Positions 1 through 23,818 of a stretch of 64,000 nucleotides of DNA are shown here, one piece after another. Position 1 is the stretch's first letter. Every line of letters begins with the position of its first letter. Where the stretch lies: positions 30,938,001 to 31,002,000 of the forward strand of contig OX638165.1 in the NCBI GenBank assembly GCA_951804945.1, written 5' to 3'. The position numbers and the translations under genes were made by a program. Below the pieces are notes generated by a model. The model saw only the letters and a program-made list of their open reading frames with translations, did no database searches and was not told where the DNA came from. The DNA comes from Podarcis cretensis. Lineage: Eukaryota.

Positions 1-520
1 AGAGTCCAAGCAAAACAAAAGCCGGGCGAGGGGGCGGGGCGGCGTTAAAGCTGAGGGGGGTCGTGAAGGAGGAGAGAGTGGCGGCGGCGGCAACCACGAC
101 GACACCGGCGACCGAAGGACGAGCACGATGACTTCTCGGTCGCTTCTGGGCCCTGAGGAGAGCGGGGGGGCCCGGCTCGGGAGCAGCAGCAGCAGCAGCG
201 GCGGCGGTTGGAGCTTTCTATGACCCCCCCCTCTCTCCTCCCTCACAGGAGACACAAGCCCACCCAGCCCGCTGCCCGCCTCGCGTTGGGTCATGGTCGG
301 CAGCGCTCGCTGAGGAGGAGGCGGCGGCGGTGGCGGCGCGACCCTGGCCCCCCCCCAGCAGGTAGCCACTCTCCGCCTCCACGGTCGCTTCGTGCTCCCC
401 TGCCCCCTTTTTCCCCCCGGCTGGGACGAGGAAAGAAAGAAGAAAGGGCGACTGGGCTGTGTGTGAGTTGGTGTTTGGCGGGGGGGGCGGGACATCTCGA
501 TAGGGTGGGGGATACGCTCC
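1..520 (+). promoter_or_regulatory. YPEL1: CpG island / YPEL1 promoter and 5' region
   Basis: Very GC- and CpG-rich; GC box GGGGCGGGGC at 31-40; (GCA)n(GCG)n run at 182-207; lies 7.3 kb upstream of the first coding exon. Confidence 0.8.
60..361 (+). other. YPEL1: Putative non-coding first exon of YPEL1 (5' boundary unknown)
   Basis: Donor CAG|GTAGCC after 361 inside the CpG island; alternative donor GTGAGT at 463-468. The exon at 7639 has a clear acceptor, so an upstream exon is required. Confidence 0.5.
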
Positions 521-2049
521 CCACACATTCCAGTGTCTTGTCTCCCTCCCTCCCCCTTCTCTTTCATTCCTCCCCCCCCCCAAAAAAAAAAAACCACCTG
601 AGGATTGTGAGGAGTTTAGGTGTAGTTCTTCCTGGAAGGGTTGTTACTGATGGGGGGCAGGATCAGTTTATATTTGGGGTGGACTTAGCTTTTCTCCGCC
701 CCAACATTTGTGATCCAAGAGGTATTTTTTTGGGGGGGGGTGAACTTTGGGACTGATGACGATCCCTTTATCTGTATGGTTGCCTCTGTCGAAGGGAGGT
801 AGGGTATCCGGTCAACTTCTTTATTGACTATCTTTTCATATTCCCTGGAGGTTCAGAGGCGCTTAAAGCAACTTTCCAAAATGATGTTTGTTGTTTGGGC
901 GATGATATCCTGTCTCTAAGTAAACCAGCCAAGGCTGCTAAAAAAAAAAAAAAGAGGATTTCGAAAATATGAACAGGCTACAATTCTACAGCTTATGTAC
1001 TCAAAATCCACACTCAAGTTAAGTGGGACTTATTCCCAAGGTGTAAGTATGTAGGATTGCAGCCTAGGAAGACAGCAACAGTCATACAAAAGGACTGGGA
1101 AGCAAATTGCATTTAGATAATGAGCAGCTGACAAACAAAAGTGTTATAAAAGTAATTCAGAAAAATATTTCAAAAATTACTCTGGGAATAGTGATGGCCT
1201 TGACTAATACTTATTAATTTGCTAATAACAGCAATGTTTATATTCTATTGCATCCTCTTGGCAGAGGCAACTTACAGCAATTTCAACATCATCTGATCTC
1301 TTGGAGCCTCTTAAGATGAGAACCTTAAATAATGTGGTCTGTTTGGCCTGAGGAGAAAGAATTATTTTATTTTTAAAAATTTCCTCAACTTAGTAAGTGA
1401 TATTATGAGCCTCATACTAGTCCTTGAGTGCTAGATTTATTTACTTGAGTTTTTTTGGTGTCCTGTTGTGACACTGAAAGTTTAGAATGGCTAAAACCAA
1501 TTTTAGTGGCATCTGTGGGCCTCATGTCTCTTCCAAGGGCTCACCATTAAAAGATAAATAAATCCTGAACAAAAAAAGAGAAACCTCCAAGACATGGAGG
1601 AAAAGAATAGTTGTTTTTCTATTTGCTGTAGAAGGAAAAGAATTGTGCATCCTTGAGAAAGGTCTGATCAGAGCTGCTAGCCAGGGACTCCTGTTACCAG
1701 TTTGTCTCAAATGGAAGCCCAGTTTCTTAATAGAATTACTATAGGTGAGTGTGTATTGGAATGTACTCTGCACAGGCTCAGAAACCCAATAGCATGCACT
1801 TTAATGCTTTGTGTGTTCTAGAGTTTTTTTCAGATTCAAATTTAATCACCAGTTTGCATATACACAAAGGCTCCACTCTTCCTTCTCCCTTGTCTGAGCA
1901 GTCTGAGAAAGGAGTGCAGGGGGATTTGGCTTTTGCAGCCTGTGGAGGTAATAGGGGACACAATAGCCTCCATGAGGGTTTTTTGTTTACTTGAAGGTTT
2001 AGAAAGAAATTGTTTTGCAAGGTGGGTGTTGTTGTTTTTAATTAGCGTG

Positions 2050-3090
2050 TTACCGAGAGGGGGACAAGAGCTTATCCTAGCCAATTCAGTTCTGTAATCT
2101 TCTGTATGCGTCGGTGATTTAATTTCCTTCTCATGCTCCGCACTCCCTTTGCCCCTCCATCTTTCAGGGCTGCGCACCACAAGGGCGGTATGTTTACCCC
2201 TGATCATAGCATCGCAGAAATTCCCTACAAGATGCAGGCGGTCCTTGAGCCTGTTATCTGGGGCAGTAGAACAGTAAACATCTCTGAGTCGGTTTTGTGT
2301 CACTCTGCCTCCGCAAGCTCTTTGTCGGTTTGGAGCTGGGATGCGGGGGGGGGGGGGGCGTTTTGTTTGCTGCTCGGATTCGCACATTTTTCTATGACGA
2401 TCGTGCTGAGCAGCTGGGGGGGGGTCGTCTATACGTGCCGCCCCTTCTGCAGTTTCTTGTGGTTTTGGAGCCTGCTAGGCTGCTATTCAATGGCTCGAAC
2501 AAGTAAGCTCCAGAGGTAAGGGGATTTTCGTTCAGCTTCAGCTGCAGAACCGGATCTGTTTTGCTTTGCTTTGTTTGTGACTGCATGCTGGCTTGCTCTT
2601 TTCCGTCAGCCCTCGAGGCTTTTTCCTCGCCAGATCTTTCGCTTTCATTGATTTAACCGCAGAAAAGAGAACTTGCCCTTTCTCCCCCCTCCCCTGTCGG
2701 TTTCGTGGTGGTTGGAATTCGAAGCAAAGTGGAACTGGAATTCTGGCTCGAGCTGATCGCCCTGCGGCTGGACAAGGAAATGAAGGTGGAAAAACACCTT
2801 TCCTCCCCGACCTTGTGCCAGAACTGGACACCCCCCATCTTGGGCAAGTCGAAGCCAGCGTGCTTCGCTGCGCTCTAGGTCGACCCCACCGGGGGCGCTC
2901 AGACACTGTTTGTAAACAGTGCCAGAAAGTGAGCCGTTTGCAGCCGCCGTTGGCCTTTTGTTTTGATCCACCGGGCGCGGACTGGCTGTGGCAGGGGCTG
3001 GCTGCTGCTGCTGCTGTTGTGGGTAGGCTGGCTGGGACTTTGCTGCTGCACGTCCGTTCATCTCCCCTCCCCTCCTCCGTGCTGTAATGT
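2050..3090 (+). promoter_or_regulatory. Second CpG-enriched block; candidate alternative promoter / first exon
   Basis: CpG-rich unique sequence inside an otherwise AT-rich intron, with two consensus donors: AA|GTAAGC (2503) and AG|GTAAGG (2516). Confidence 0.4.
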
Positions 3091-6000
3091 CCAAAGCAGA
3101 CTGGAGGTGCATGTTTATTTTTAGAATGTTGCTTCTCGCAGTGCCCTTGCCTTTCTCCATGAAAAGTTGCCTTTTCCACAAGGCTCCGAACCCATTGTTT
3201 CTACACTTCAGAGGAAGAACAGGCAAAAGAAAGGGTAGGAGGAGATGTTTTGGTTAAAATCAGAGCAGGCAGTGATGTTTTGCTTTGTGGTCTGAGTGTG
3301 TAGTGAGGAGTTTTCAACTCCACTAACAACAGCCCTTGAAAGTGAAGATCAAATCTGCACAAGTCTTTTGTCTCTCTTTATTTTAGCATTGTTTGAAGTT
3401 TAGTAAGAGTGAGGTCTGTTAAATGGTCTTATGGAAATGTGTTTTCACAGAAGCCACTTTAGCACTGTCTACAATGCAGCAACATCTATTTCTATGTACT
3501 GTATACATTTGATGCAGTCTGGATTGCTGGTGGATCAGAAAGGTTCTTTAGCGTTAACAGACTTCATGGGAAAGTCCAAGACAGGAAAACAAGATTGATC
3601 TTTCTGAGTTCTTGGTTACTGTTAATGGGGGGTGGGAAGCAACTTAGCTTCAGTAAAATGAACAATTAAACAGCTACATTTTATGTGTCTTACATAACAA
3701 ATCTTAGGGGTTTTAAACTTAGCAAAAACCAACTGTGCATGTTTCTTCAGAAATAAATACTTCTCTGCTTATTTCAGCTTACTCTCAGATAAGTATGGAT
3801 AAGGTTATAACCCTGATTTTTGTAGTTCATATTTAATAGAAGGCCTTTTAGTAGCTTGGTAAAAACGTGAATGAAATGAAGGCTTGTTATAGTACAAAAC
3901 CTCTATAAATATAATGTATGAAATAGCAGTGGGACATACTGTATAGTAGAATCAAATGACCTGTTGCTTGTGTTCCTGATAAAAGCTATTTAATGGTTTG
4001 AGAATATCTTAATATTATGTAGATCTGTTGTATGCTGATAACGTTCTGTTGCAGCTAACATGCTTAAATATTTGTTTATACATCCGGGTGCAGAATTAGG
4101 ACAGCCCACTATGCTTAAGATTGGCTGTTGCTTGCCTACTAAGATTACGCTTTCCTTCAAATGACATCATGCTGGTAGATAGAAGAGCTAACATTGTACT
4201 GTATGCATTCAGTGTATGAATTGTAATATCACATGAAAATAACATTTATCCATCTAATAAAATGGGTAGCATGTTCAACTGGGAGTAGCAAGGGCATGAT
4301 GAAAATGAAAATTGTGTCTTAATTGCTTCCAGAATGAATGTTTGAAAAAACATATGTTCCAATGCTTAAACCTGTTTTCACATGGGGCTTGGCAGAGAAT
4401 ATCAGATTTGTACAGCATGCCCTTGTGTATAGTTAGTATTTTAGGGGAGACAAACATTTTGATGGCTTTTAAAACTCCTTTAGTGTTGTGAAATGGAATG
4501 GGGGGGGGGGCTTGGGTAGTTGTTATTACAATCTCAATCAGTTTTGCTTACACATTTAAAAGGGTAGTCTTTTCATAGTTCAGTAAATTTGAGCTCTACT
4601 GTATTTTCATCTCTCTCTTTTTGGTACTTCTGTAATCCTCAGGATTCGTCCACACCTGTAGTTTTTGGTTGCAGTGGGTATGGCAATTCATGTAGGTCTG
4701 TTTCAAGGAAACTACTGTTGGTTGGTTCCTTTCTACACCACAAAACTGAAAGCTATGCAGTGTACAATATGACTTCAGTTTAAAACCAAAACAACATAAC
4801 AAATACAATTGAACCAACCAAACAAACAGAAGCACAGAATGGGTCACCTAACAAGAAGGTTCTAAAAAACAAGATAATCCTTTTCATCAGAATGCTCCCT
4901 GAAATAATTAAGTATTGGTGCCTAAAACTCATTATTGTTGCTGCCAGCTTGATTTTATTAGGTAGACTGCCTATAAACCGGATGCCACCACACTAAATGC
5001 ACAATCTGTCACTGCCAGGCACTCTTAGATGTACCTCAATGGCAGATTGCAGATATCAGAGAAAGGTATATGAATAGTACTTAATCAAGTATTCAGAAAT
5101 CTTTGGTTTAACTTATTAGGCAGCTATTACCCTTGAGCCCTCCTTCCCCCTATATCTTCTGTCTGTGCCTGTGGCGGTGGAGTTTGGGAGGAATAAACTT
5201 TGTCTTAAAGATTTGACAGATGGTTCAATCTTATGCAACAGCCCAGTCAAAAATACAGAAAGACCCAACCCTTGATTCCAGTGCTTTATACCGGTAAATG
5301 CTTCCAGAGACTGTGGGGAAGCACTGAGAAGGTCCCATTGCTTTTTCTGAAGATCTGTAAAAGATGAAACAAGACCTCCACCCCCTGAAGTTATCTGTGC
5401 ATGCCAAAGAACATGGGAGGGGTCTATTCATGTTTCATTTCTCACAGGATTTTTGCAGAATGCAAAACTCTTCACAAAGGAAGTGCAAAGGGAAGCATAT
5501 TCCTCCGTGTTCTCTGCAGTTCCTTAAGAACTCAGGAAAAGGACTAGTCAGCAGAGGGAGGATAGGGGTTATTGCACTTCCTTGCACCACTGGCATCCCT
5601 GGTCTTAGTTAACAAGAAACATAATTGTGAAGTTCATGAGCACACTCTGCACATAAACTTTAAAGTAGGATAGTTGAAAACTGATGAGTTTACAAGTTTA
5701 AACCAACTTTAAACAAAAGTTAAAATGAAGCCAGATTAAAATATGTGAATGTAAAACAAAAAAACATGATGTCCACACAAATAATCTTTTAAAACTGAAT
5801 CTGCGACATTATCACATGCATTGAAGCATGTAAACTATTTTTATTGATTTTCAACTTACAAAACATAATTAATAAACTTTAAATGCGCTGCCATTGGCAA
5901 TACAGTAGTAAAATTCCTTTACTTTAGAATTCCATTCTCTCTCTCTAAGAACTGGATTAATTACTGCCATTGATTTTAATAAATTTAATTTTGAGATTTG

Positions 6001-7638
6001 ATTTTAGGTGACTGCCTTTCCTCATGTTTCCTACCTTAGTTCTACAAGGCACAGGCTCATTAATTTTAAGAAGGTTTGTGAATCCAACATTATATCTTAT
6101 TATACATTTATATTGTCCAAAGACTGAATTACTGCTTTCTCCTCTTCCCCACTCTCCCATTTATCTTGTTACAGGAATTATTCAGCCACCACTATGACTG
6201 AATAATTAACCAGAGGCTCAGATCAGTCACTGTAACTAACCATAGTTTAGGACCTAAACTATGATTTGAGCTTCCAAACATTAAACAAGCACTTTTATGG
6301 TTTAGAACTGTTTCCTATGGCCCTCCTTTCTCCCAGCATACAAGTTCACAATTTCATTTCCCATCTCTTTGTTGAAGCAGCCTCTGTAGTGACACCCATA
6401 TAACACCAGTTTTTAGAATTCAGACATTGCACCAAACCATGGCTTGCAAACCCCATATTACCTTAATGGTTGTCTCCTGTTCTTATTTGCTGCTTCTGGC
6501 TGCATGATATATGGTACTGTATTGACAACAGTCCTTTTTGGGGGGAGTTATTGTTTACACTTATTATTTCTACCACACCATAATCTTTGTGCCTTTCTAA
6601 TTTTTACTACCAATGGAAAATCCCAGGTTTCTTGACTGTCCTTGTTGAAATTGTTAAAGAAATGGTTAAAATGTTGATAGGGTTTTCCCACCTCTATGTT
6701 CACTCAGATTGATTTATTATGGGATACAGCATTGGTACTAGATGTCTGTGGTCTCCAGACCCTAAGTTCATTATTACATATTAGAATCAAATGAGACCAC
6801 CCTGAAGCTCGAGGATCTGAAGAGAATGTGTTTCTTGCTTCAGCTGGCTGATAATGAACAGAGGTTTGGCATTCATGGAGTGATACCATCTGCCAAGCTT
6901 CTGGAAATTATATTTTTTTTTGAGCAGCAGTATTTCTTATAGAAAGCTGTTTGAAGAGGCTACACTACAAAGTTTTTGAATCCACACAGTTCAGTATTTA
7001 TTTGGGCTTTGGCTGTGTTTAAACATCCTTATAAACTATGGCTTATTGTGATGGAAATGAGCCAAGGTGAGCCTTGGACTCATATGCTCCCTGTCTTTCC
7101 CCTCCTTCTCCAGTTTGGCTGCAAGTTGCTTGTTTCATTCAAACCTGACAACCTGTGGTTAACTATGGTTTGATTTAAACAAACAGACTTCAGAATGCAC
7201 TTACTTTGTGGGGAACCTATGGGCAGAAAGTTTCATAGTTGGCCTAACTCAGCAACTATTTTGTGTTGGCTGAGTGGAATGTTAGTTACGCTTGCCTTTT
7301 GTTCATCCAGCTGTTTTACCACCCTTGAGTTTCCAGTGCTTGTGTTTGCATATTGCCCTCTGTTGCAGTGTTCCCATCTCCCTTTTGGATGGGAGGTTGG
7401 GAGCACCTCAGTATTACAGTGCAAGAGTAGGGCTCCCCTCTCCTCTCCCATGTAGGACTCTGCGGCATATACATGCAGGCATGATATTTTAACAGACAGC
7501 AACACTGCATGTAACTTAAGGTACCCATTTTATTTTAAACTTACACTAATGATGAAATGGAGAAGTTAAATGTTTAATTAGAAATATGTACTATAAAAAG
7601 ACTTGAAGTGGCTTATATGCTTCTTTCTTCCGTTGCAG

Positions 7639-7804
7639 GTTTTGATTGTTTCTTCTGTGGCGTTTGTGTGGAAGCTGCCACACACACTCCAGAACAACAA
7701 CGGCTTTTGCTTGCATTTTCCAGTGTTTCTTTTGTCAGCAAGTTCAGCAAAGTTGTAATTCTTCAAGTGCCAGCCCTGATCAGAGTGAAGAACTGGCCAC
7801 AGAG
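7639..7804 (+). other. YPEL1: YPEL1 exon 2, 5' leader portion (no ATG; contains in-frame ACG at 7700)
   Basis: Acceptor ttctttcttccgttgcag|G before 7639; sequence runs uninterrupted to the ATG at 7805. Confidence 0.8.
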
Positions 7805-7921
7805 ATGGTAAAAATGACAAAATCCAAAACGTTCCAGGCTTACCTACCAAACTGTCATCGGACCTACAGTTGTATCCACTGCAGAGCCCATCTAGCCAAT
7901 CATGATGAACTAATTTCCAAG
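7805..7921 (+). CDS. YPEL1: YPEL1 (yippee-like 1) coding exon 1: [39 protein letters not shown]
   Basis: Matches the YPEL1 N-terminus as I recall it (TKSK and LPNC distinguish it from YPEL2 TRSK/LPSC). First CxxC of the Yippee zinc site. 117 nt, phase 0, donor AAG|GCAAGT. Confidence 0.96.
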
Positions 7922-8514
7922 GCAAGTGGCCTGTCTCTAGACCTCATGAATGCATGATCTGGTGCCTGTTTGTAACTGCCATAATGAGACAAAAAGATAC
8001 ACCAAAAGCTATGTGTTTCAGCGTCTATTAGAAATACACTGCATAAGAATTTACATAATATATTTCCTGATTACATTCTGTTTGTGTTCAGGTGCTACTT
8101 CTTGAGGTGTGTTTGGTCTCTTCTCAGGCCAGAATGATGTGTAATTGATATTTTAAAAGAAGTGCTCTTAATGTGAAGCACATTGATCAGGGTTGTGGTC
8201 ACTTGAGGTAATGTGACTAACCTGCTTGTTTTAGTTTGGTAGCATGATTCTTCTAAAGAGAATCACTGTGTAACTTACACTATGTTAATGTGTTCTTAAT
8301 ATTCAAGTACAGAAGATCTAGTATGCAGACATGAAATCTAAACCAACTAGCCAGCCATGTGAAGAAAATAGTCAATGGATTGAAGTATGCAGAGATGTAT
8401 ATCTGGTCAGTTGGAAAAGAAGGGTGGGTGGGTTTCTTCTTCTGTGTATGTTCTGCAGCTAGACCTGTCCAGTGAGAGCATTCCTGAAGTGAGGAAGCAT
8501 GCTTTTCAAAACTA

Positions 8515-8745
8515 CAGTGGTACCTCGGGTTACATACGCTTCAGGTTACATACGCTTCAGGTTACAGACTCCACTAACCCAGAAATAGTGCTTCAGGTTA
8601 AGAACTTTGCTTCAGGATGAGAACAGAAATCGTGCTCCGGCAGCAGGAGGCCCCATTAGCTAAAGTGGTGCTTCAGGTTAAGAACAGTTTCAGGTTAAGA
8701 ACGGACCTCTGGAACTAATTAAGTACTTAATCCGAGGTACCACTG
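8515..8745. mobile_element. Tc1/mariner-superfamily (Tigger/pogo-like) MITE
   Basis: TIR CAGTGGTACCTCGG...CCGAGGTACCACTG flanked by TA on both sides. Confidence 0.9.
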
Positions 8746-10207
8746 TACTTTCTTTTCTTCCTTGTTTTTCCCCTTTATGCATTCATTTGAAGGACTTTTG
8801 GTAACAACTATGAATCAAGGCTCTTTGAGATCTGTATATATGAAGAAACCTCTCACCAGGCAGTTTTCCCAACTCCTATGCAAAGATTTGGGAGTTTCTA
8901 TGTTTCTGAACTGAGAGACCATATTCTCCCAAGCATATATTCATATTCACCTGTTCTGTATCCACTCTTCATGTGCATTGGGGAGGAATTTGGACCTCAG
9001 GAAGAGCATCATCTAATATTCAGATTTTCCTTCACAGCAACGGGGTCTCTCATGATTGCTATATGCTGCGATCTACATGCACATATTCTGAAGAGTATGC
9101 ATTTGTTAGCAGTTGCTACAGCACTGGTTTGTGCTGCAGATTTAAGCTTACCACACAGAAACACAATAAAGGGAAAATGACAAGAGAAATGCTCCCTCCA
9201 CTGATTTTTGTTTCTCCCCCTCACCCCCAGCCAATTTTGCACCAAAATTAAGGGAATATTTTTTTTTAAACAAAGTATATTCTGTAAAGAAACCTCATAT
9301 AATTTTCTACTTCCTGTGTGTTAAAAATAGTATTGTATTCTCAGGTAAAAACATAATAAACAATCTACTAAACATTAAAAATGGTTTCAGACTGACAATT
9401 TGTCTAACACCCATCTTCTTTAATTGTTACAAGTTTAGTATACTGTGACTAATAAGTTGGTGGGACAGGGTCATGTAACTGTAATTAAACGTTGTACTTA
9501 ATTAGGTTAATTGGTATAGTTTTTAGATGACAAGAGAGAGGTGAGGGTTTCCGCTACAGTTATGGATTTTTTCAGTGCCTGGTTTTCCTAATTAGGTATG
9601 TTCACAAGACTGTGATGGGATGAAAATTGAATACATAGCAGTAATTTAAAGGTGTAAATGACTGGGTATGCCTGTTTTAAAAACAAACACTACAGTGCAA
9701 TTAGTTGACTCACTATTGCCCTTAAAATAAATCCAAACACTCCCTGGTTTGCAAACTACGTGGCGTGGTCATATGTGAATCACTCACGCTGCTGAAAAAA
9801 TGGAAGGAGGATTGCTTTCCAGTGTATCTTGCAGCCCATCAATCCCGGTGCTCATCCGGAATTCCTGTTTCTTCCAGCAATGAATATTGGAGGGCAGATT
9901 TCCTAGGAACTCCCACTATTGCAGTAACATACTGGGTAACTTTCCAAAAAGAGGTATTAGCAGCTTAGCTTCAATCATCCTCATGCACTAATATTGAAAC
10001 AAATATGAGTAATTGCCGAGGTGTGTATGTGTACACTTTGTACACAAATGGCAATGGCTAGTGGATGGTACAGATATGTGTGATACTGTGATTGTGTTTC
10101 ATACAAATTCTGTAAAGAAGGGGTGTAGCACCTTGTGAATCTGATCTTACTGGCTTAGCTTCATTTCCCTCCCTCTAGCCCTCCCACAGGCTATTTATTT
10201 GCCTGAA

Positions 10208-10422
10208 TAGTGGTACCTCGGGTTACAAACACTTCTGGTCACAAACTCTGATAACCTGGAAGTAGTACGTCGGGTTAAGAACTTTGCCCCAGGATGAGCA
10301 CAGAAACCGTGCACCGGCGGCAGCGGGAGGCCCCATTAGCTAAAGTGGTACCTCGGGTTAATGGTTTCAGGTTAAGGACGGAGCTCTGGAACGAATTAAG
10401 TTCGTAACCTGAGGTACCACTG
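10208..10422. mobile_element. Tigger/pogo-like MITE, same family as 8515
   Basis: Degenerate TIRs and the same internal sequence (ggaggccccattagctaaagtgg). Confidence 0.85.
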
Positions 10423-11099
10423 CAATTTTTAATCTTATTTTTTTATTCAACTGCAAGACCATTTTACCCTGCTGATGTATATTGGACATGGGACTTGTTA
10501 ATAGCTCTTGAACAATTAAATAATATGAATCACAGGAGCCAATACTTGGAAAGGCAACTAAGTTGTAATAAAACAGGCACTAATAAAATTCTTAACCCTG
10601 AGTATTGTAAGTAACAATAACAACTTATGGCTATTTGTGACTCACAATTTTGCTGTTTGCTGCACATCAGTATTTTGGCACATGTTTTCTCAGGCACACC
10701 ATATGTTAAAATATATGGTGTAACTTTCTCTGATCTCTTCTGACAGGGTGGTAATGAAAACCAAATGAAGTAATCTTGGAAATTTTGCTGGTTTATGGAA
10801 TAGACATCATTTTACAGCCGTTTTTATGTATTCAAATTCCTGTTTGAGATCTGTATTCCCCTTTGACCTATTAGGTAGCAATGATGATGTGTTCAAGAGG
10901 TTCATTTCAAGTACTGTATATATCTAGGCAGTCTAGGAAGGTGCTTTGATACAATTGCATTCCATATGAATACAATGTGGTTTCTAGGTGGTGCAGAATC
11001 CCATCTCCTCCTGTCCAAATTTGCATGTAGTGCGAAAGGGGCTGTCACCTCCTGTTTTTTTCTGCTCGGCATCTGGTACTCTGAGGAAAACTATTGATA

Positions 11100-11345
11100 C
11101 AGTGGTACCTCTGGATGCGAACAGGATCCATTCCGGAGCCCCGTTCGCATCCTGAAGCAAACGCACCCCGCGTCTGCGCATGCCACAATTCGCCGCTTCC
11201 GCGCATGCATGTGACGTCATTTTGAGCGTCTGCGCATGTGCGAGCCGTGAAACCCGGAAGTAACGCGTTCCGTTACTTCTGGGTCACCACAGAGTGCAAC
11301 CCGAAAATGCTCAACCTGAAGCTACTTCAACTCGAGTTATGACTG
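11100..11345. mobile_element. Tigger/pogo-like MITE, second family
   Basis: TA|CAGTGGTACCTC...GAGTTATGACTG|TA; internal palindromic gcgcatgcgc-type motifs. Confidence 0.85.
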
Positions 11346-12400
11346 TATGGGGATTCTTATTTCAGATTTTAAAAATGGATCGTACCACTGTGTAGTTGGA
11401 GGTTCCTAAGGGTTGGTGGCATCCGTTTAAGTGAAACTTGTGAATGCTCTAGCTCATGATAATGTTAGCATGTTTATGTGTTACTCTATCCTTTATCAAT
11501 TCTCCCATTTAACTGTAAATGGACACAGATATTCCTTCAGGAATTCTGAATCTTCCCTATGTGATACTTTTTAGCATCATGGACTCTAGAGTCTTTGTGT
11601 CTCTGCCATCTACACACTGCAACATTTTCTGCCACTTAGTTAACAATGTTTCAAGGACTGATAGTGTTTGAAATAAAAATAATTATTTAGGAATAATATA
11701 CATCTTGTATTAAACTTCTGACCTATGGGAACGTTTACGTGCTCTATAATGACAATCCTGCTGAATCTGGGCATTCACCAGGTCATAAGTAACTTCATAG
11801 AGCTCATTTGTAAGAGGTTGCTAGATAACTGCTAGGTACAGTTTTACTGAATATTACCATTTTGTCTCAGAATGGTTCTTTCTGACTCTTGTTCACTAAG
11901 AACATTCTCAGATTCATATTATCTCCTTGATGGCCTGATAGCTTCGCACAAGAATTAATGACTAGCTTTAGTTGGTTTTTTGCGGGGCAGGGGGATCTGT
12001 TTTTTTAACCAAAAAAGGAGCCAGCCAGATTGGTAAAAGGGGGAGATGGGGACCTAAGACTTGCTGCTTGTTCTGTTGAGTTGATTCTAATTTGTTTCCT
12101 GCTCCCCTTCAGACAGTGCTTGACCCAGGGGTCATCATCTCCCCTTCAGACAGTGCTTGACCCAGGGGTGCCAACTTGAATAATATATGGGGGGGGCAGG
12201 TGAACACCCACACACACACATAATCGATCACATGACATGGTGCGCACACACCATTTGAATGGCAATTCCTACCAACTTTTTGGGGGCCAAAGACCATAGG
12301 AGTTAAAACTAAGTGTCAATTTTAAATCTCCAGTTTTAATTGTGTCCCTTTTCCTAACACATTAGAACCCTTTGGTGGAGGGGGGGGGGACTTCGACAGC

Positions 12401-12403
<3 letters not shown>

Positions 12404-12431
<28 letters not shown>
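12404..12431. repeat. (CA)n microsatellite
   Basis: Read directly from the sequence. Confidence 0.95.
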
Positions 12432-13219
12432 CAACTTGAAACTCTAATAACTCAAGAACCAAATGGAGAATGCCCAGTGAACTCGTATGTTTTCTAGTTA
12501 TCCAATTTTAATTTTCTGTAATCCTATACAATTACACCTGTATCATTTTTTGGCTTAGTTTAGGAAATAATGACCAAAGTTAATTAAAAGCAAAATTTAT
12601 TTAAAACTTATTTAGCTTACTAAATAAGGAACACAGAAAAGTAGAGGGCAAAGTGAGTCCAATAAATTATTGAGAGGCAAATCCATGTATTTTTCACATG
12701 TTTTATTTCAATAATGTTTCAATAATATAAGGTAGACTGTTACTCTCCCCATATTACTGATGGGGAAGGAAGAGAGAGTGGATTGCCTTAAAACAGTGTG
12801 TGTTAATGGTAGAGTGGAGCTACAGACTTCTATAGCTAAGGTTTTGAACTGTGCCAGATCTTTCTTTGCTATACTACATTGTGTTAATTACCATACCTTT
12901 TCTTTTGTCTGTTGCAGCAGTGTCAGACACTGTTGGCTTAAAGAAGGCACTATACCTAGCAGTAGTTGCACAAACACTTGGGGAAAGATTTGGTTTTGAG
13001 ATTAGAGCTTAGACAATGAGTTTCCAGCCCCATGTGGCAGATCTGAAGAATAATTACTTGGAACAATACATGCAGCTGAATTTGCACTTAACATACAATG
13101 TACTAGTTTCGAAGTTCAGGCGGAATGCTTTGATTTGCCTCTTCATTGAGACAATGTTTTAGTGTTTTTTAAAAAATATTTATATATATATATGTATATG
13201 TCTTCTTTTTCTTTTACAG

Positions 13220-13263
13220 TCCTTTCAGGGAAGCCAGGGGCGAGCCTACCTCTTTAATTCAGT
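13220..13263 (+). CDS. YPEL1: YPEL1 coding exon 2: SFQGSQGRAYLFNSV (last codon split)
   Basis: Acceptor cttttacag, donor GT|gtaagt; 44 nt; continues the frame of the previous exon. Confidence 0.96.
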
Positions 13264-13964
13264 GTAAGTGCAATTATTATTTTCTATGGAATAGGAGGAC
13301 TATTTTACAACAATAGCATGTGAGTGGATTGGCTTGTTGCCTTGGTTTACGCAAGGACCCAAGTTGAGCCCTATGGGATCAACCCAGCGGTCCGTCTAGT
13401 CTAGCAGTCTGCTTCCCACAGTGGCCGGCAGATGTCTTGGAAGCCATCAACATGGCTGAAATACGGTAGCCCTTCTTTGCTGTTGCTCCCTAGCATCTGG
13501 TATTTTGTGGTTTTCAAATACTTTGAATGGTGTGAGAGAAGGGTTTTGCTCTTCCTGCAGAAGGCCACACATCCTTCAGTCAGGCACACGTGGAAGGCTT
13601 CTGAGGGCTGAACGACTATGACTCAGTAATAGAGTGCATGCTTTGCATGCAAAAGAGCCATAGTTCAATCAAGTCTAGATAAGAAAGGTTCCTGGAGAGA
13701 TGCTGGCAACCAGTGTAAACAAAACTGAGCTAGGTAGACTAGTGGGCTGACTTGATATAAGACAGTTTTCTATGTTCCTCTTAATTGGCATTGCCAAAAA
13801 GTTATGTTTGGAACCAGCCCATATGGAAACATCGTTCTAACTATAGATTTTACAATGCAACTTTTTTCTTCTTTAGAGTATCTATTAAAATCCTTTCAGT
13901 GTAGATAATAACTTCTGTTGGTGGCATATGACCACCTTTCCCTAGCCATAGCTAAGAGAAACAT

Positions 13965-14789: not shown

Positions 14790-14898
14790 GGTGAATGTGG
14801 GCTGTGGTCCTGCGGAAGAGAGAGTTCTTCTGACAGGCTTACATGCAGTAGCAGATATTTATTGTGAAAACTGCAAAACCACTCTTGGATGGAAATAC
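14790..14898 (+). CDS. YPEL1: YPEL1 coding exon 3: [36 protein letters not shown]
   Basis: Acceptor gtcttgcag, donor TAC|gtaagc; 109 nt; second CxxC (CENC); visible in ORF 14758..14958. Confidence 0.97.
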
Positions 14899-17236: not shown

Positions 17237-17326
17237 GAACATGCGTTTGAAAGCAGTCAGAAATATAAAGAAGGAAAATTCATCATTGAACTTGCCCACA
17301 TGATCAAAGACAATGGCTGGGAGTAA
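17237..17326 (+). CDS. YPEL1: YPEL1 final coding exon: EHAFESSQKYKEGKFIIELAHMIKDNGWE*
   Basis: Acceptor ttcttgcctag; 90 nt ending in TAA. The four exons total 360 nt = 119 aa + stop. KFII and GWE are YPEL1-type residues. Confidence 0.97.
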   Translation, partial: EHAFESSQKYKEGKFIIELAHMIKDNGWE

Positions 17327-23665: not shown

Positions 23666-23818
23666 NNNNNNNNNNNNNNNNNNNNNNNNNNNNNNNNNNN
23701 NNNNNNNNNNNNNNNNNNNNNNNNNNNNNNNNNNNNNNNNNNNNNNNNNNNNNNNNNNNNNNNNNNNNNNNNNNNNNNNNNNNNNNNNNNNNNNNNNNNN
23801 NNNNNNNNNNNNNNNNNN
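23666..23818. other. Assembly gap (153 N)
   Basis: Run of N flanked by CACAC and AC, suggesting an unresolved (CA)n repeat. Confidence 0.99.

What the first reader, a model, noticed from the sequence alone, without database searches (positions are those of the whole stretch)
7700..7807. In-frame ACG in strong Kozak context predicts a non-AUG, Cys-rich N-terminally extended YPEL1
Seen: the exon-2 leader has no ATG, and the YPEL1 frame is open from a TGA at 7643-7645 to the ATG at 7805. An ACG at 7700-7702 is exactly 105 nt upstream, in frame, in context acaACGG (A at -3, G at +4). Initiation there adds 35 aa: (M)[34 protein letters not shown], a hydrophobic C-x3-C-x2-C head followed by a polar/acidic linker. 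Established: ACG is a documented near-cognate start codon. I recall that YPEL paralogues were listed among conserved non-AUG extensions in mammals, so the phenomenon may be known there; this needs verifying. Standard annotation would still miss it in a lizard. Inference: the Cys/Phe head looks like an S-palmitoylation or membrane-anchoring (or extra metal-binding) module, so leaky scanning would give two differently localised proteoforms of 154 and 119 aa.
Basis: partly seen in the sequence, partly recalled or inferred. Interest (0 to 1): 0.8.

Follow-up and report, generated by a model that had tools for sequence, protein, structure and literature searches.

The report
Known ACG-started YPEL1 extension, lizard copy
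The lizard YPEL1 gene carries the same 35-codon, cysteine-rich stretch upstream of its AUG, starting at an ACG, that was reported in 2011 as conserved in vertebrates and is annotated in human, so the finding is real but already known, and its proposed membrane-anchor role is untested.

Summary
Exon 2 starts at 7639. An in-frame TGA lies at 7643-7645. ACG at 7700-7702 has A at -3 and G at +4. There is no ATG in any frame before the AUG at 7805, and 35 codons are open. In this one sequence that is not rare (P about 0.11). Comparison makes it real. The 26-residue head [26 protein letters not shown] is identical in most teleost models and in a sturgeon, and one residue different in a frog and a bird-like ORF. 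It is recognisable in mammals (Equus model, also 35 residues). It is shared as T-A-[FL]-x-C-[IV]-[FL]-x-C-F-x-C with YPEL2, with in-frame indels in the linker.

RNA reads from related lizards cover the leader. Its only two differences there are synonymous.

This is already known. Ivanov et al. 2011 list YPEL1, YPEL2 and YPEL4 as non-AUG extensions conserved in all vertebrates. The GENCODE human YPEL1 extension is 35 codons.

The palmitoylation, membrane or metal reading is untested. The hydrophobic patch is too short for a membrane helix, Pfam and the Atlas gave nothing, and the AlphaFold model failed.

The parts
7639..7921 (+). YPEL1 exon 2: 166-nt leader plus the first 39 codons of the canonical protein
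   Evidence: Acceptor ttgcag|g. tblastn of the Equus extended YPEL1 aligns to 7700-7924 without gaps. RNA depth starts in the 7600-7799 bin, and a spliced contig matches down to 7635.
7643..7645 (+). In-frame TGA, 4 nt into exon 2; it bars any AUG of exon 1 from feeding the extension
   Evidence: It is unchanged in the related organism whose contig covers it (X13 record 1).
7665..7684 (+). Local hairpin UGUGUGG-AAGCUG-CCACACA (7-bp stem, 6-nt loop; outer pairs reach 7656-7693), ending 16 nt before the ACG
   Evidence: It appears in the minimum-energy folds (-16.8 kcal/mol for 7655-7705, 61% of the ensemble, z = -1.24, not significant). The same nucleotides seem conserved in fish in another reading frame. 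This is an inference from translations.
7700..7702 (+). Proposed ACG initiation codon, A at -3 (7697), G at +4 (7703)
   Evidence: Thr at this position, with Thr or Ala before it and Ala after it, holds in YPEL1, YPEL2 and the fish YPEL2-like group. A two-frame back-inference gives ACG, A at -3 and G at +4 in cyprinids. The Ensembl-derived Equus, Bos and Geospiza models start exactly here.
7700..7804 (+). 35-codon N-terminal extension: conserved head (codons 1-26) and variable acidic linker (codons 27-35)
   Evidence: The head is identical in most teleost models and in the sturgeon; frog and the bird-like ORF differ at one residue. The linker varies by whole codons. The only differences in three related lizards are synonymous: 7798 C>A (Ala33) and 7804 G>A (Glu35).
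7712..7756 (+). Cysteine codons C5 (7712-7714), C9 (7724-7726), C12 (7733-7735) and C19 (7754-7756); C-x3-C-x2-C is kept in nearly all full-head models of all paralogue groups
7805..7807 (+). Canonical AUG (context gagATGg); a second AUG lies at 7814
7922..7927 (+). Exon-2 donor AAG|GCAAGT, a GC rather than GT donor
   Evidence: The junction is fixed by ISK|SFQG with exon 3 at 13220. Contigs of two organisms break at 7921/7922, and others run on into the intron.
13220..13263 (+). YPEL1 exon 3
14790..14898 (+). YPEL1 exon 4
17237..17326 (+). Coding part of the last YPEL1 exon, with the TAA stop at 17324-17326

Best explanation
This is the lizard orthologue of the known ACG-initiated N-terminal extension of YPEL1. 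Scanning 40S subunits meet no AUG in exon 2 before 7805. A minority start at ACG 7700 (A at -3, G at +4) with initiator Met-tRNA and make a 154-residue protein. The rest scan on, with no out-of-frame AUG in the way, and start at AUG 7805 to make the 119-residue protein. Shown: the anatomy, transcription of the leader, the in-frame TGA that excludes an upstream AUG in this species, and deep conservation of the peptide. Inferred: that ribosomes really start at the ACG, the ratio of the two products, and any function of the Cys-rich head.
For: Anatomy. Literature: YPEL1/2/4 extensions and their non-AUG starts are conserved in all vertebrates (PMC3105428). The human GENCODE extensions are 35 codons (YPEL1) and 33 codons (YPEL2) (PMC9789052 supplement). 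That equals the 35 found here and the 33 found in bird and mammal YPEL2 models. My own comparison: the 26-residue head is identical in lizard, most teleost models and sturgeon, and differs at one residue in frog and the bird-like ORF. Equus has 35 residues aligned without gaps. Paralogues share T-A-[FL]-x-C-[IV]-[FL]-x-C-F-x-C, with conservative replacements and whole-codon indels. In Microtus, Bison and Bubalus an AUG sits at the position of lizard Ile6. In the frog and in YPEL2, similarity stops just upstream of the Thr-Thr-Ala position. The cyprinid start codon is inferred as ACG with the same context. The leader is transcribed, and in related lizards both changes in it are synonymous. Exon 2 is less diverged than the adjacent intron (p = 0.01 and 0.06).
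Against: There are no ribosome footprints or peptides for the YPEL1 extension in any species. Human YPEL1 lacks Ribo-seq coverage and scores negative in PhyloCSF among mammals. Protein databases hold only open frames, so 'always open' is partly ascertainment. The leader is also conserved as nucleotides: 32 of 33 inferred cyprinid bases are identical, only 1 of 9 third positions changed, and conservation continues upstream of the ACG in another frame. Part of the peptide identity could therefore reflect RNA or DNA constraint. One icefish cluster has Ala at the start position.
Confidence: 0.75

Rival explanations
1. The leader is a conserved non-coding RNA or DNA element, for example a translational control element, a splicing enhancer or a UCE-type enhancer. 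The open frame is a by-product of near-invariant nucleotides, and the extension is not made in meaningful amounts.
For: From the start codon on, 32 of 33 inferred cyprinid nucleotides equal the lizard's. Only 1 of 9 determined third positions differs. The 61 nt upstream of the ACG is also conserved, although its frame differs between ray-finned fishes and tetrapods. A stable local hairpin sits there. Twelve coded organisms hold the exon nearly word for word, many in small multi-species runs that look like target capture. Mammalian PhyloCSF for YPEL1 is negative.
Against: Paralogues that separated early in vertebrates keep the frame, differ by whole-codon indels and show conservative replacements (A/T, I/V, F/L) around an invariant Cys triad. 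The linker changes freely but stays in frame. Some mammals have an in-frame AUG inside the extension. The RNA from the ACG onwards has no unusual folding (z = +1.04 and -0.28). The two kinds of constraint can also coexist.
Confidence: 0.12
2. The extension is translated, but not (or not only) from ACG 7700. It could start at another near-cognate codon (ATT 7715, or TTG 7664 / CTG 7655 upstream). In other species it could start from an AUG supplied by an upstream exon, as several fish and frog gene models assume.
For: In-frame ATT 7715, TTG 7664 and CTG 7655 exist. Tetrapod leaders keep the same frame for about 12 codons upstream of the ACG. Microtus, Bison and Bubalus have AUG at the ATT position. 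NCBI models in Rana, Tachysurus and others join an upstream AUG in frame. The icefish cluster lacks Thr at the start position.
Against: In this lizard the TGA at 7643-7645 excludes any exon-1 AUG. CTG 7655 and TTG 7664 have C at -3 and T at +4. The frog has CAG where the lizard has TTG 7664, and it differs from the lizard at 4 of the 5 residues before the last Thr. The residues TAFAC between the ACG and the ATT are conserved as strongly as the rest of the head, and they are conserved across paralogues.
Confidence: 0.08
3. Chance: an unremarkable open leader in one lizard, with no biological meaning.
For: In the lizard sequence alone, an ATG-free leader with 35 open codons arises in 11% of first-order Markov resamplings of the leader.
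Against: The head is identical in sturgeon and most teleost models, one residue different in frog and the bird-like ORF, and recognisable in mammals and paralogues.
Confidence: 0.01

Closest known systems
Human and vertebrate YPEL1 non-AUG N-terminal extension (Ivanov et al. 2011, PMC3105428; GENCODE ENST00000672036.1 as listed in PMC9789052)
   Same: It is the same gene and the same exon, with the same length of 35 codons. The Equus model starts at the same aligned Thr and aligns without gaps. The start is a near-cognate codon in good context, and the downstream AUG is reachable by leaky scanning.
   Different: Nothing in kind. The lizard head is the slowly evolving non-mammalian form, identical to most fish models. 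Mammalian YPEL1 extensions have diverged (19 of 26 head residues shared with Equus; rodent and primate forms differ more). The lizard also has an in-frame stop 4 nt into exon 2, which makes the need for a non-AUG start unambiguous.
YPEL2 non-AUG extension (33 codons; same papers) and a fish YPEL2-like paralogue
   Same: The head motif T-A-[FL]-x-C-[IV]-[FL]-x-C-F-x-C is homologous. It is preceded by Thr or Ala (a purine at -3) and followed by Ala (G at +4).
   Different: It is three to six residues shorter after the Cys triad, and its linker is proline-rich rather than acidic. It is a different gene and not in this window.
Other leaky-scanning non-AUG proteoforms named in Ivanov et al. 2011 (TEAD1, EIF4G2, WDR26)
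   Same: The mechanism class is the same: an upstream near-cognate start in a good context gives a longer isoform alongside, or instead of, the AUG form.
   Different: The proteins are unrelated. Some of them have western-blot or Ribo-seq support, whereas YPEL1 has none.
N-terminal Cys-cluster S-palmitoylation anchors such as GAP-43 and PSD-95 (from my own knowledge, not tested)
   Same: Several cysteines lie within the first about 12 residues, next to hydrophobic residues.
   Different: The YPEL head has no basic residues (0 K/R). No acylation or membrane data exist. The resemblance is a lead only.
Radical-SAM type C-x3-C-x2-C iron-sulfur motif (from my own knowledge)
   Same: The cysteine spacing is the same, with an aromatic residue before the third Cys.
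   Different: There is no radical-SAM domain: Pfam finds nothing in the extension and only Yippee-Mis18 in the protein. A 35-residue tail cannot be a member of that family.

Membership tests
[quoted passage not shown] 2011; YPEL1/2/4 cluster) | [quoted passage not shown] | tested here: met
   ACG at 7700-7702 has A at -3 and G at +4.
[quoted passage not shown] 2011; YPEL1/2/4 cluster) | Open frame from that codon to the AUG, with no upstream in-frame AUG able to supply the extension (a delimiting stop) | tested here: met
   The 35 codons are open. TGA lies at 7643-7645. There is no ATG in 7639-7804 in any frame. The exon boundary is backed by RNA.
[quoted passage not shown] 2011; YPEL1/2/4 cluster) | The extension peptide is conserved in orthologues and paralogues | tested here: met
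   The head is identical in most teleost models and in sturgeon, one residue different in frog and the bird-like ORF, and recognisable in mammals. The motif is shared with YPEL2 and a fish YPEL2-like group.
[quoted passage not shown] 2011; YPEL1/2/4 cluster) | [quoted passage not shown] | tested here: inconclusive
   The evidence is indirect. Thr holds at the start position in all but one cluster. ACG, A at -3 and G at +4 are inferred for cyprinids from two reading frames. No difference at the ACG was listed for the related lizards. Ensembl-derived models start at this Thr. Direct DNA of distant species could not be fetched. The icefish cluster has Ala there.
[quoted passage not shown] 2011; YPEL1/2/4 cluster) | Signature of purifying selection on the protein (synonymous excess, indels in multiples of three) | tested here: met
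   The linker and paralogue indels are whole codons. Both differences in related lizards and the one inferred cyprinid difference are synonymous. The numbers are small. The formal Ka/Ks and MLOGD values are in Table 1 of PMC3105428, which is not held as text.
[quoted passage not shown] 2011; YPEL1/2/4 cluster) | Direct evidence of translation from the non-AUG codon | not testable with these tools
   No ribosome profiling or proteomics was available here. Human YPEL1 mRNA lacks Ribo-seq coverage.
Yippee/Mis18 family (host protein) | Yippee-Mis18 domain | tested here: met
   PF03226 matches residues 56-146 of the Equus extended orthologue. Lizard exons 3-5 are identical, or nearly so, to it. YPEL5 in PDB 8QBN aligns to residues 54-154.
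S-palmitoylated or membrane-anchoring N-terminal module | Hydrophobic segment long enough to span or insert into a membrane | tested here: not met
   The best 19-residue Kyte-Doolittle mean is 0.9. The hydrophobic run is 11-12 residues.
S-palmitoylated or membrane-anchoring N-terminal module | Demonstrated acylation of the cysteines, or membrane localisation of the long form | not testable with these tools
   No held paper addresses it. YPEL1/2 studies cloned from the first ATG.
Radical-SAM Fe-S proteins | Radical-SAM domain around the C-x3-C-x2-C motif | tested here: not met
   There is no Pfam match in the extension.

The most novel reading that the evidence does not exclude
The YPEL1 exon-2 leader may be a dual-purpose ultraconserved element. 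First, an RNA module (the hairpin 16 nt upstream of the ACG, plus constrained synonymous sites) would set how often ribosomes start at the ACG. Second, the peptide it encodes, with its conserved C-x3-C-x2-C(-C) head, would be a lipidated or metal/Fe-S-binding tag. That tag would give the long YPEL1/YPEL2 proteoform a location or partner different from the 119-residue form, which is the form the functional studies I checked appear to have worked with.
Probability: 0.15. Interest if true: 0.55.

Novelty: already known. Interest (0 to 1): 0.2.

Why it matters
As a discovery it adds little. The YPEL1 non-AUG extension was published in 2011 and is annotated in human. It has a practical use: lizard and other non-mammal annotations miss a proteoform whose head is about as conserved as the Yippee domain itself. 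This lizard's in-frame stop just inside exon 2 makes it a clean case in which only a non-AUG start can produce the extension. The open question is functional. The YPEL2 study I checked cloned from the first ATG, and no held paper tests the long form, so whatever the conserved Cys-rich head does has not been examined. The nucleotide-level conservation of the leader also suggests regulated use of the ACG.

Tried and rejected
No codon-level multi-species alignment, dN/dS or hairpin covariation test could be made. I did not scan metagenome contigs for the leader, because host contamination there could include human DNA and the yield looked low.
2. AlphaFold2 on the Equus 154-residue orthologue with a 25-row alignment gave mean pLDDT 38.7. 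Even the Yippee domain failed to fold. The model was discarded and no fold search was run.
3. RNA structure as the reason for conservation, or as a downstream enhancer of ACG use: 7639-7830 gave z = -0.28 and 7703-7780 gave z = +1.04, so this was rejected. The upstream hairpin is stable, but z = -1.24 is not significant against shuffles.
4. Pfam on the 35-residue extension gave no family. The ESM Atlas gave no usable hit.
5. A transmembrane helix was rejected on hydropathy.
6. Chance was rejected on conservation, although the single-sequence statistic is weak.
Exon 2 was searched by reference, and the Equus database protein served as the full-length proxy.
8. No contig that I took for human was fetched. 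Read laying did not refuse the stretch.
9. The large representative-protein search was not used because it was not needed.

Full report
WHAT IS THERE. The window carries a complete YPEL1 gene on the + strand.
- Exon 2 is 7639-7921, exon 3 is 13220-13263 and exon 4 is 14790-14898. The last coding exon runs from 17237 to the TAA at 17324-17326.
- The canonical coding sequence is 357 nt (119 codons).
- Exon 2 opens after a good acceptor (cttctttcttccgttgcag|g). It holds an in-frame TGA at 7643-7645, and no ATG in any frame until 7805.
- ACG at 7700-7702 is in frame, 105 nt upstream of the AUG, in the context acaACGg.
- Other in-frame near-cognate codons exist: TTG 7646, CTG 7655, TTG 7664, ATT 7715 and CTG 7793. 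CTG 7655 and TTG 7664 have C at -3 and T at +4.

IS IT MORE THAN CHANCE? Not in this sequence alone. First-order Markov resamplings of the leader (keeping its own dinucleotide transitions) give 35 open codons and an ATG-free 166 nt in 11% of trials. The weight lies in the comparison with other species.

COMPARISON WITH OTHER SPECIES. A word search with only the extension recovered fish gene models and Logan ORFs that read through the leader. A whole-exon search and a third search with a fish model added mammals, birds, a frog and a sturgeon.
- The first 26 residues, [26 protein letters not shown], are identical in the lizard, Acipenser and most teleost models; a few fish models differ at one to three residues.
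- Rana and a Logan ORF whose linker equals the bird consensus differ at one residue, Q14R.
- The Equus model, a UniProt entry of 154 residues that starts at Thr, aligns to 7700-7924 without gaps and has the same 35 residues.
- The linker, codons 27-35, varies in sequence and in length by whole codons.
- YPEL2 of birds and mammals (33 residues) and a fish YPEL2-like group share T-A-[FL]-x-C-[IV]-[FL]-x-C-F-x-C. The replacements are conservative and the indels are whole codons.
- The residue before the start Thr is Thr or Ala, which gives a purine at -3. The residue after it is Ala, which gives G at +4.
- In the frog and in YPEL2, similarity stops just upstream of that point.
- Microtus, Bison and Bubalus have Met at the position of lizard Ile6, which is ATT 7715.
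- One exception: an icefish cluster has Ala at the start position.

Two indirect routes were used.
- Two-frame inference. One Cirrhinus gene model reads the leader in another frame. Combining it with the frame-0 models of related cyprinids fixes most bases. The start codon comes out as ACG, with A at -3 and G at +4. From the start codon on, 32 of 33 determined bases equal the lizard's, and the one change is synonymous, ATT>ATC.
- Sequencing reads. Twelve coded organisms hold exon 2 almost word for word. Two bulk RNA-seq runs and two contig sets from three related organisms were laid on 7400-13399.
  - No depth falls in 7400-7599. Depth is 7-12 over 7600-7999, and the first-mate strand fits an RNA on the + strand.
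  - One contig matches down to 7635 and then continues for 322 letters elsewhere, that is, it is spliced to an upstream exon.
  - Across exon 2 only two differences are listed, 7798 C>A (GCC>GCA, Ala33) and 7804 G>A (GAG>GAA, Glu35). Both are synonymous.
  - The intron just downstream carries 14 differences in about 370-500 nt (Fisher p = 0.01 and 0.06).

WHAT IS KNOWN.
- Ivanov et al. [quoted passage not shown]
- The supplement of Fedorova et al. 2022 (PMC9789052) lists the GENCODE-annotated human extensions as 35 codons for YPEL1 (ENST00000672036.1) and 33 codons for YPEL2.
- The same paper notes a negative mammalian PhyloCSF score for YPEL1 and no Ribo-seq coverage of the whole YPEL1 mRNA.
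- The lizard feature is therefore the orthologue of a published, annotated one.

MECHANISM. The most likely mechanism is leaky scanning. Some 40S subunits start at the ACG and the rest reach the AUG at 7805 (gagATGg), because no out-of-frame AUG intervenes. This would give 154- and 119-residue products. In this species the TGA at 7643-7645 excludes an AUG from exon 1. Translation itself is inferred, not shown.

FUNCTION OF THE HEAD.
- The hydrophobic run is 11-12 residues. The best 19-residue hydropathy mean is 0.9, so there is no membrane helix.
- The extension has no basic residues and four acidic ones.
- Pfam, the ESM Atlas and the PDB give nothing for the extension.
- The AlphaFold model was unusable.
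- Held papers on YPEL1, YPEL2 and YPEL4 do not mention the long form, and the YPEL2 study cloned from the first ATG.
- Palmitoylation and metal binding remain open ideas. The C-x3-C-x2-C spacing also recalls Fe-S motifs, but there is no such domain.

A SECOND LAYER OF CONSTRAINT.
- The leader is conserved as nucleotides as well. Only 1 of 9 determined third positions differs between cyprinid and lizard.
- The 61 nt upstream of the ACG is conserved too. In ray-finned fishes its distal part corresponds to a different lizard frame (tied in Conger), apparently through a 2-nt change in the (CA)n run at about 7679-7687.
- That stretch folds into a hairpin, 7665-7684 (-16.8 kcal/mol for 7655-7705, 61% of the ensemble). 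It is not significant against shuffles (z = -1.24).
- No unusual structure follows the ACG.

LIMITS.
- There was no direct DNA of distant species.
- Protein databases are biased towards open frames.
- Organism names of the sequencing runs are coded, so the depth of the lizard comparison is known only from about 3-4% intron divergence.

VERDICT. Novelty: already known. Interest: low.

Noticed in passing
window 7656-7693 (core 7665-7684): A stable hairpin, UGUGUGG-AAGCUG-CCACACA, ends 16 nt before the ACG. Translations of other species suggest the same GTGTGG...CCACAC nucleotides in fish, frog and bird. Mammalian YPEL2 may carry a compensated GUGCGG/CCGCAC version. It is not significant against shuffles (z = -1.24).
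   Followed up: partly
window 7639-7699: The non-coding part of the exon-2 leader also looks conserved from fish to lizard. In ray-finned fishes its distal half matches a different lizard reading frame, consistent with a 2-nt length change in the (CA)n run at about 7679-7687. This is nucleotide-level conservation, not protein-level.
   Followed up: partly
window 7922-9300: The exon-2 donor is AAG|GCAAGT, a GC donor, while the other introns use GT. RNA depth of 3-17 continues past it to about 9300 in three organisms, and contigs run from exon 2 into the intron. An unspliced RNA would end the frame at TGA 7955-7957 (...[16 protein letters not shown]). Fish Logan ORFs likewise read past ELISK, and an Ictalurus isoform X2 model diverges there too.
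   Followed up: partly
window 1-800 and 2000-3200: A GC-rich island (70% GC in 1-400) lies 7 kb upstream of exon 2 and is probably the YPEL1 promoter and exon 1. A second GC-rich stretch (50-57%) lies at 2000-3200. Exon 1 was not mapped, so any upstream AUGs in it are unknown.
   Followed up: no
window 8400-8800, 10200-10600, 11000-11400, 12000-12400: Very high read depth, mostly at low identity and with many loose ends, in both RNA runs and both contig sets. These behave like interspersed repeats inside intron 2.
   Followed up: no
proteins P0013, P0014, P0015 (Microtus, Bison, Bubalus): These models start MFQCFFC..., with an AUG at the position of lizard Ile6 (ATT 7715). In these mammals most of the extension could be made from a normal AUG.
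   Followed up: partly
protein P0147 (Champsocephalus esox cluster, 11 members): It has Ala instead of Thr at the start position (..HSTTTAALACIF..). The ACG may be lost in icefishes although the peptide frame is kept.
   Followed up: no
protein P0098 (Acipenser ruthenus, YPEL2-like): It reads ..PPVLRMTRSK where relatives read ..PPMVRMTRSK. The first canonical AUG seems absent, so the full N-terminus would depend on the upstream non-AUG start.
   Followed up: no
runs X1-X14: Many small runs (50-120 million letters) from nine coded organisms in five studies hold exon 2. The two that were laid behave like spliced transcript contigs. The pattern fits a locus used in multi-species capture or transcriptome phylogenomics.
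   Followed up: no
window 23666-23818: A run of 153 N (assembly gap or mask). It was left untouched.
   Followed up: no
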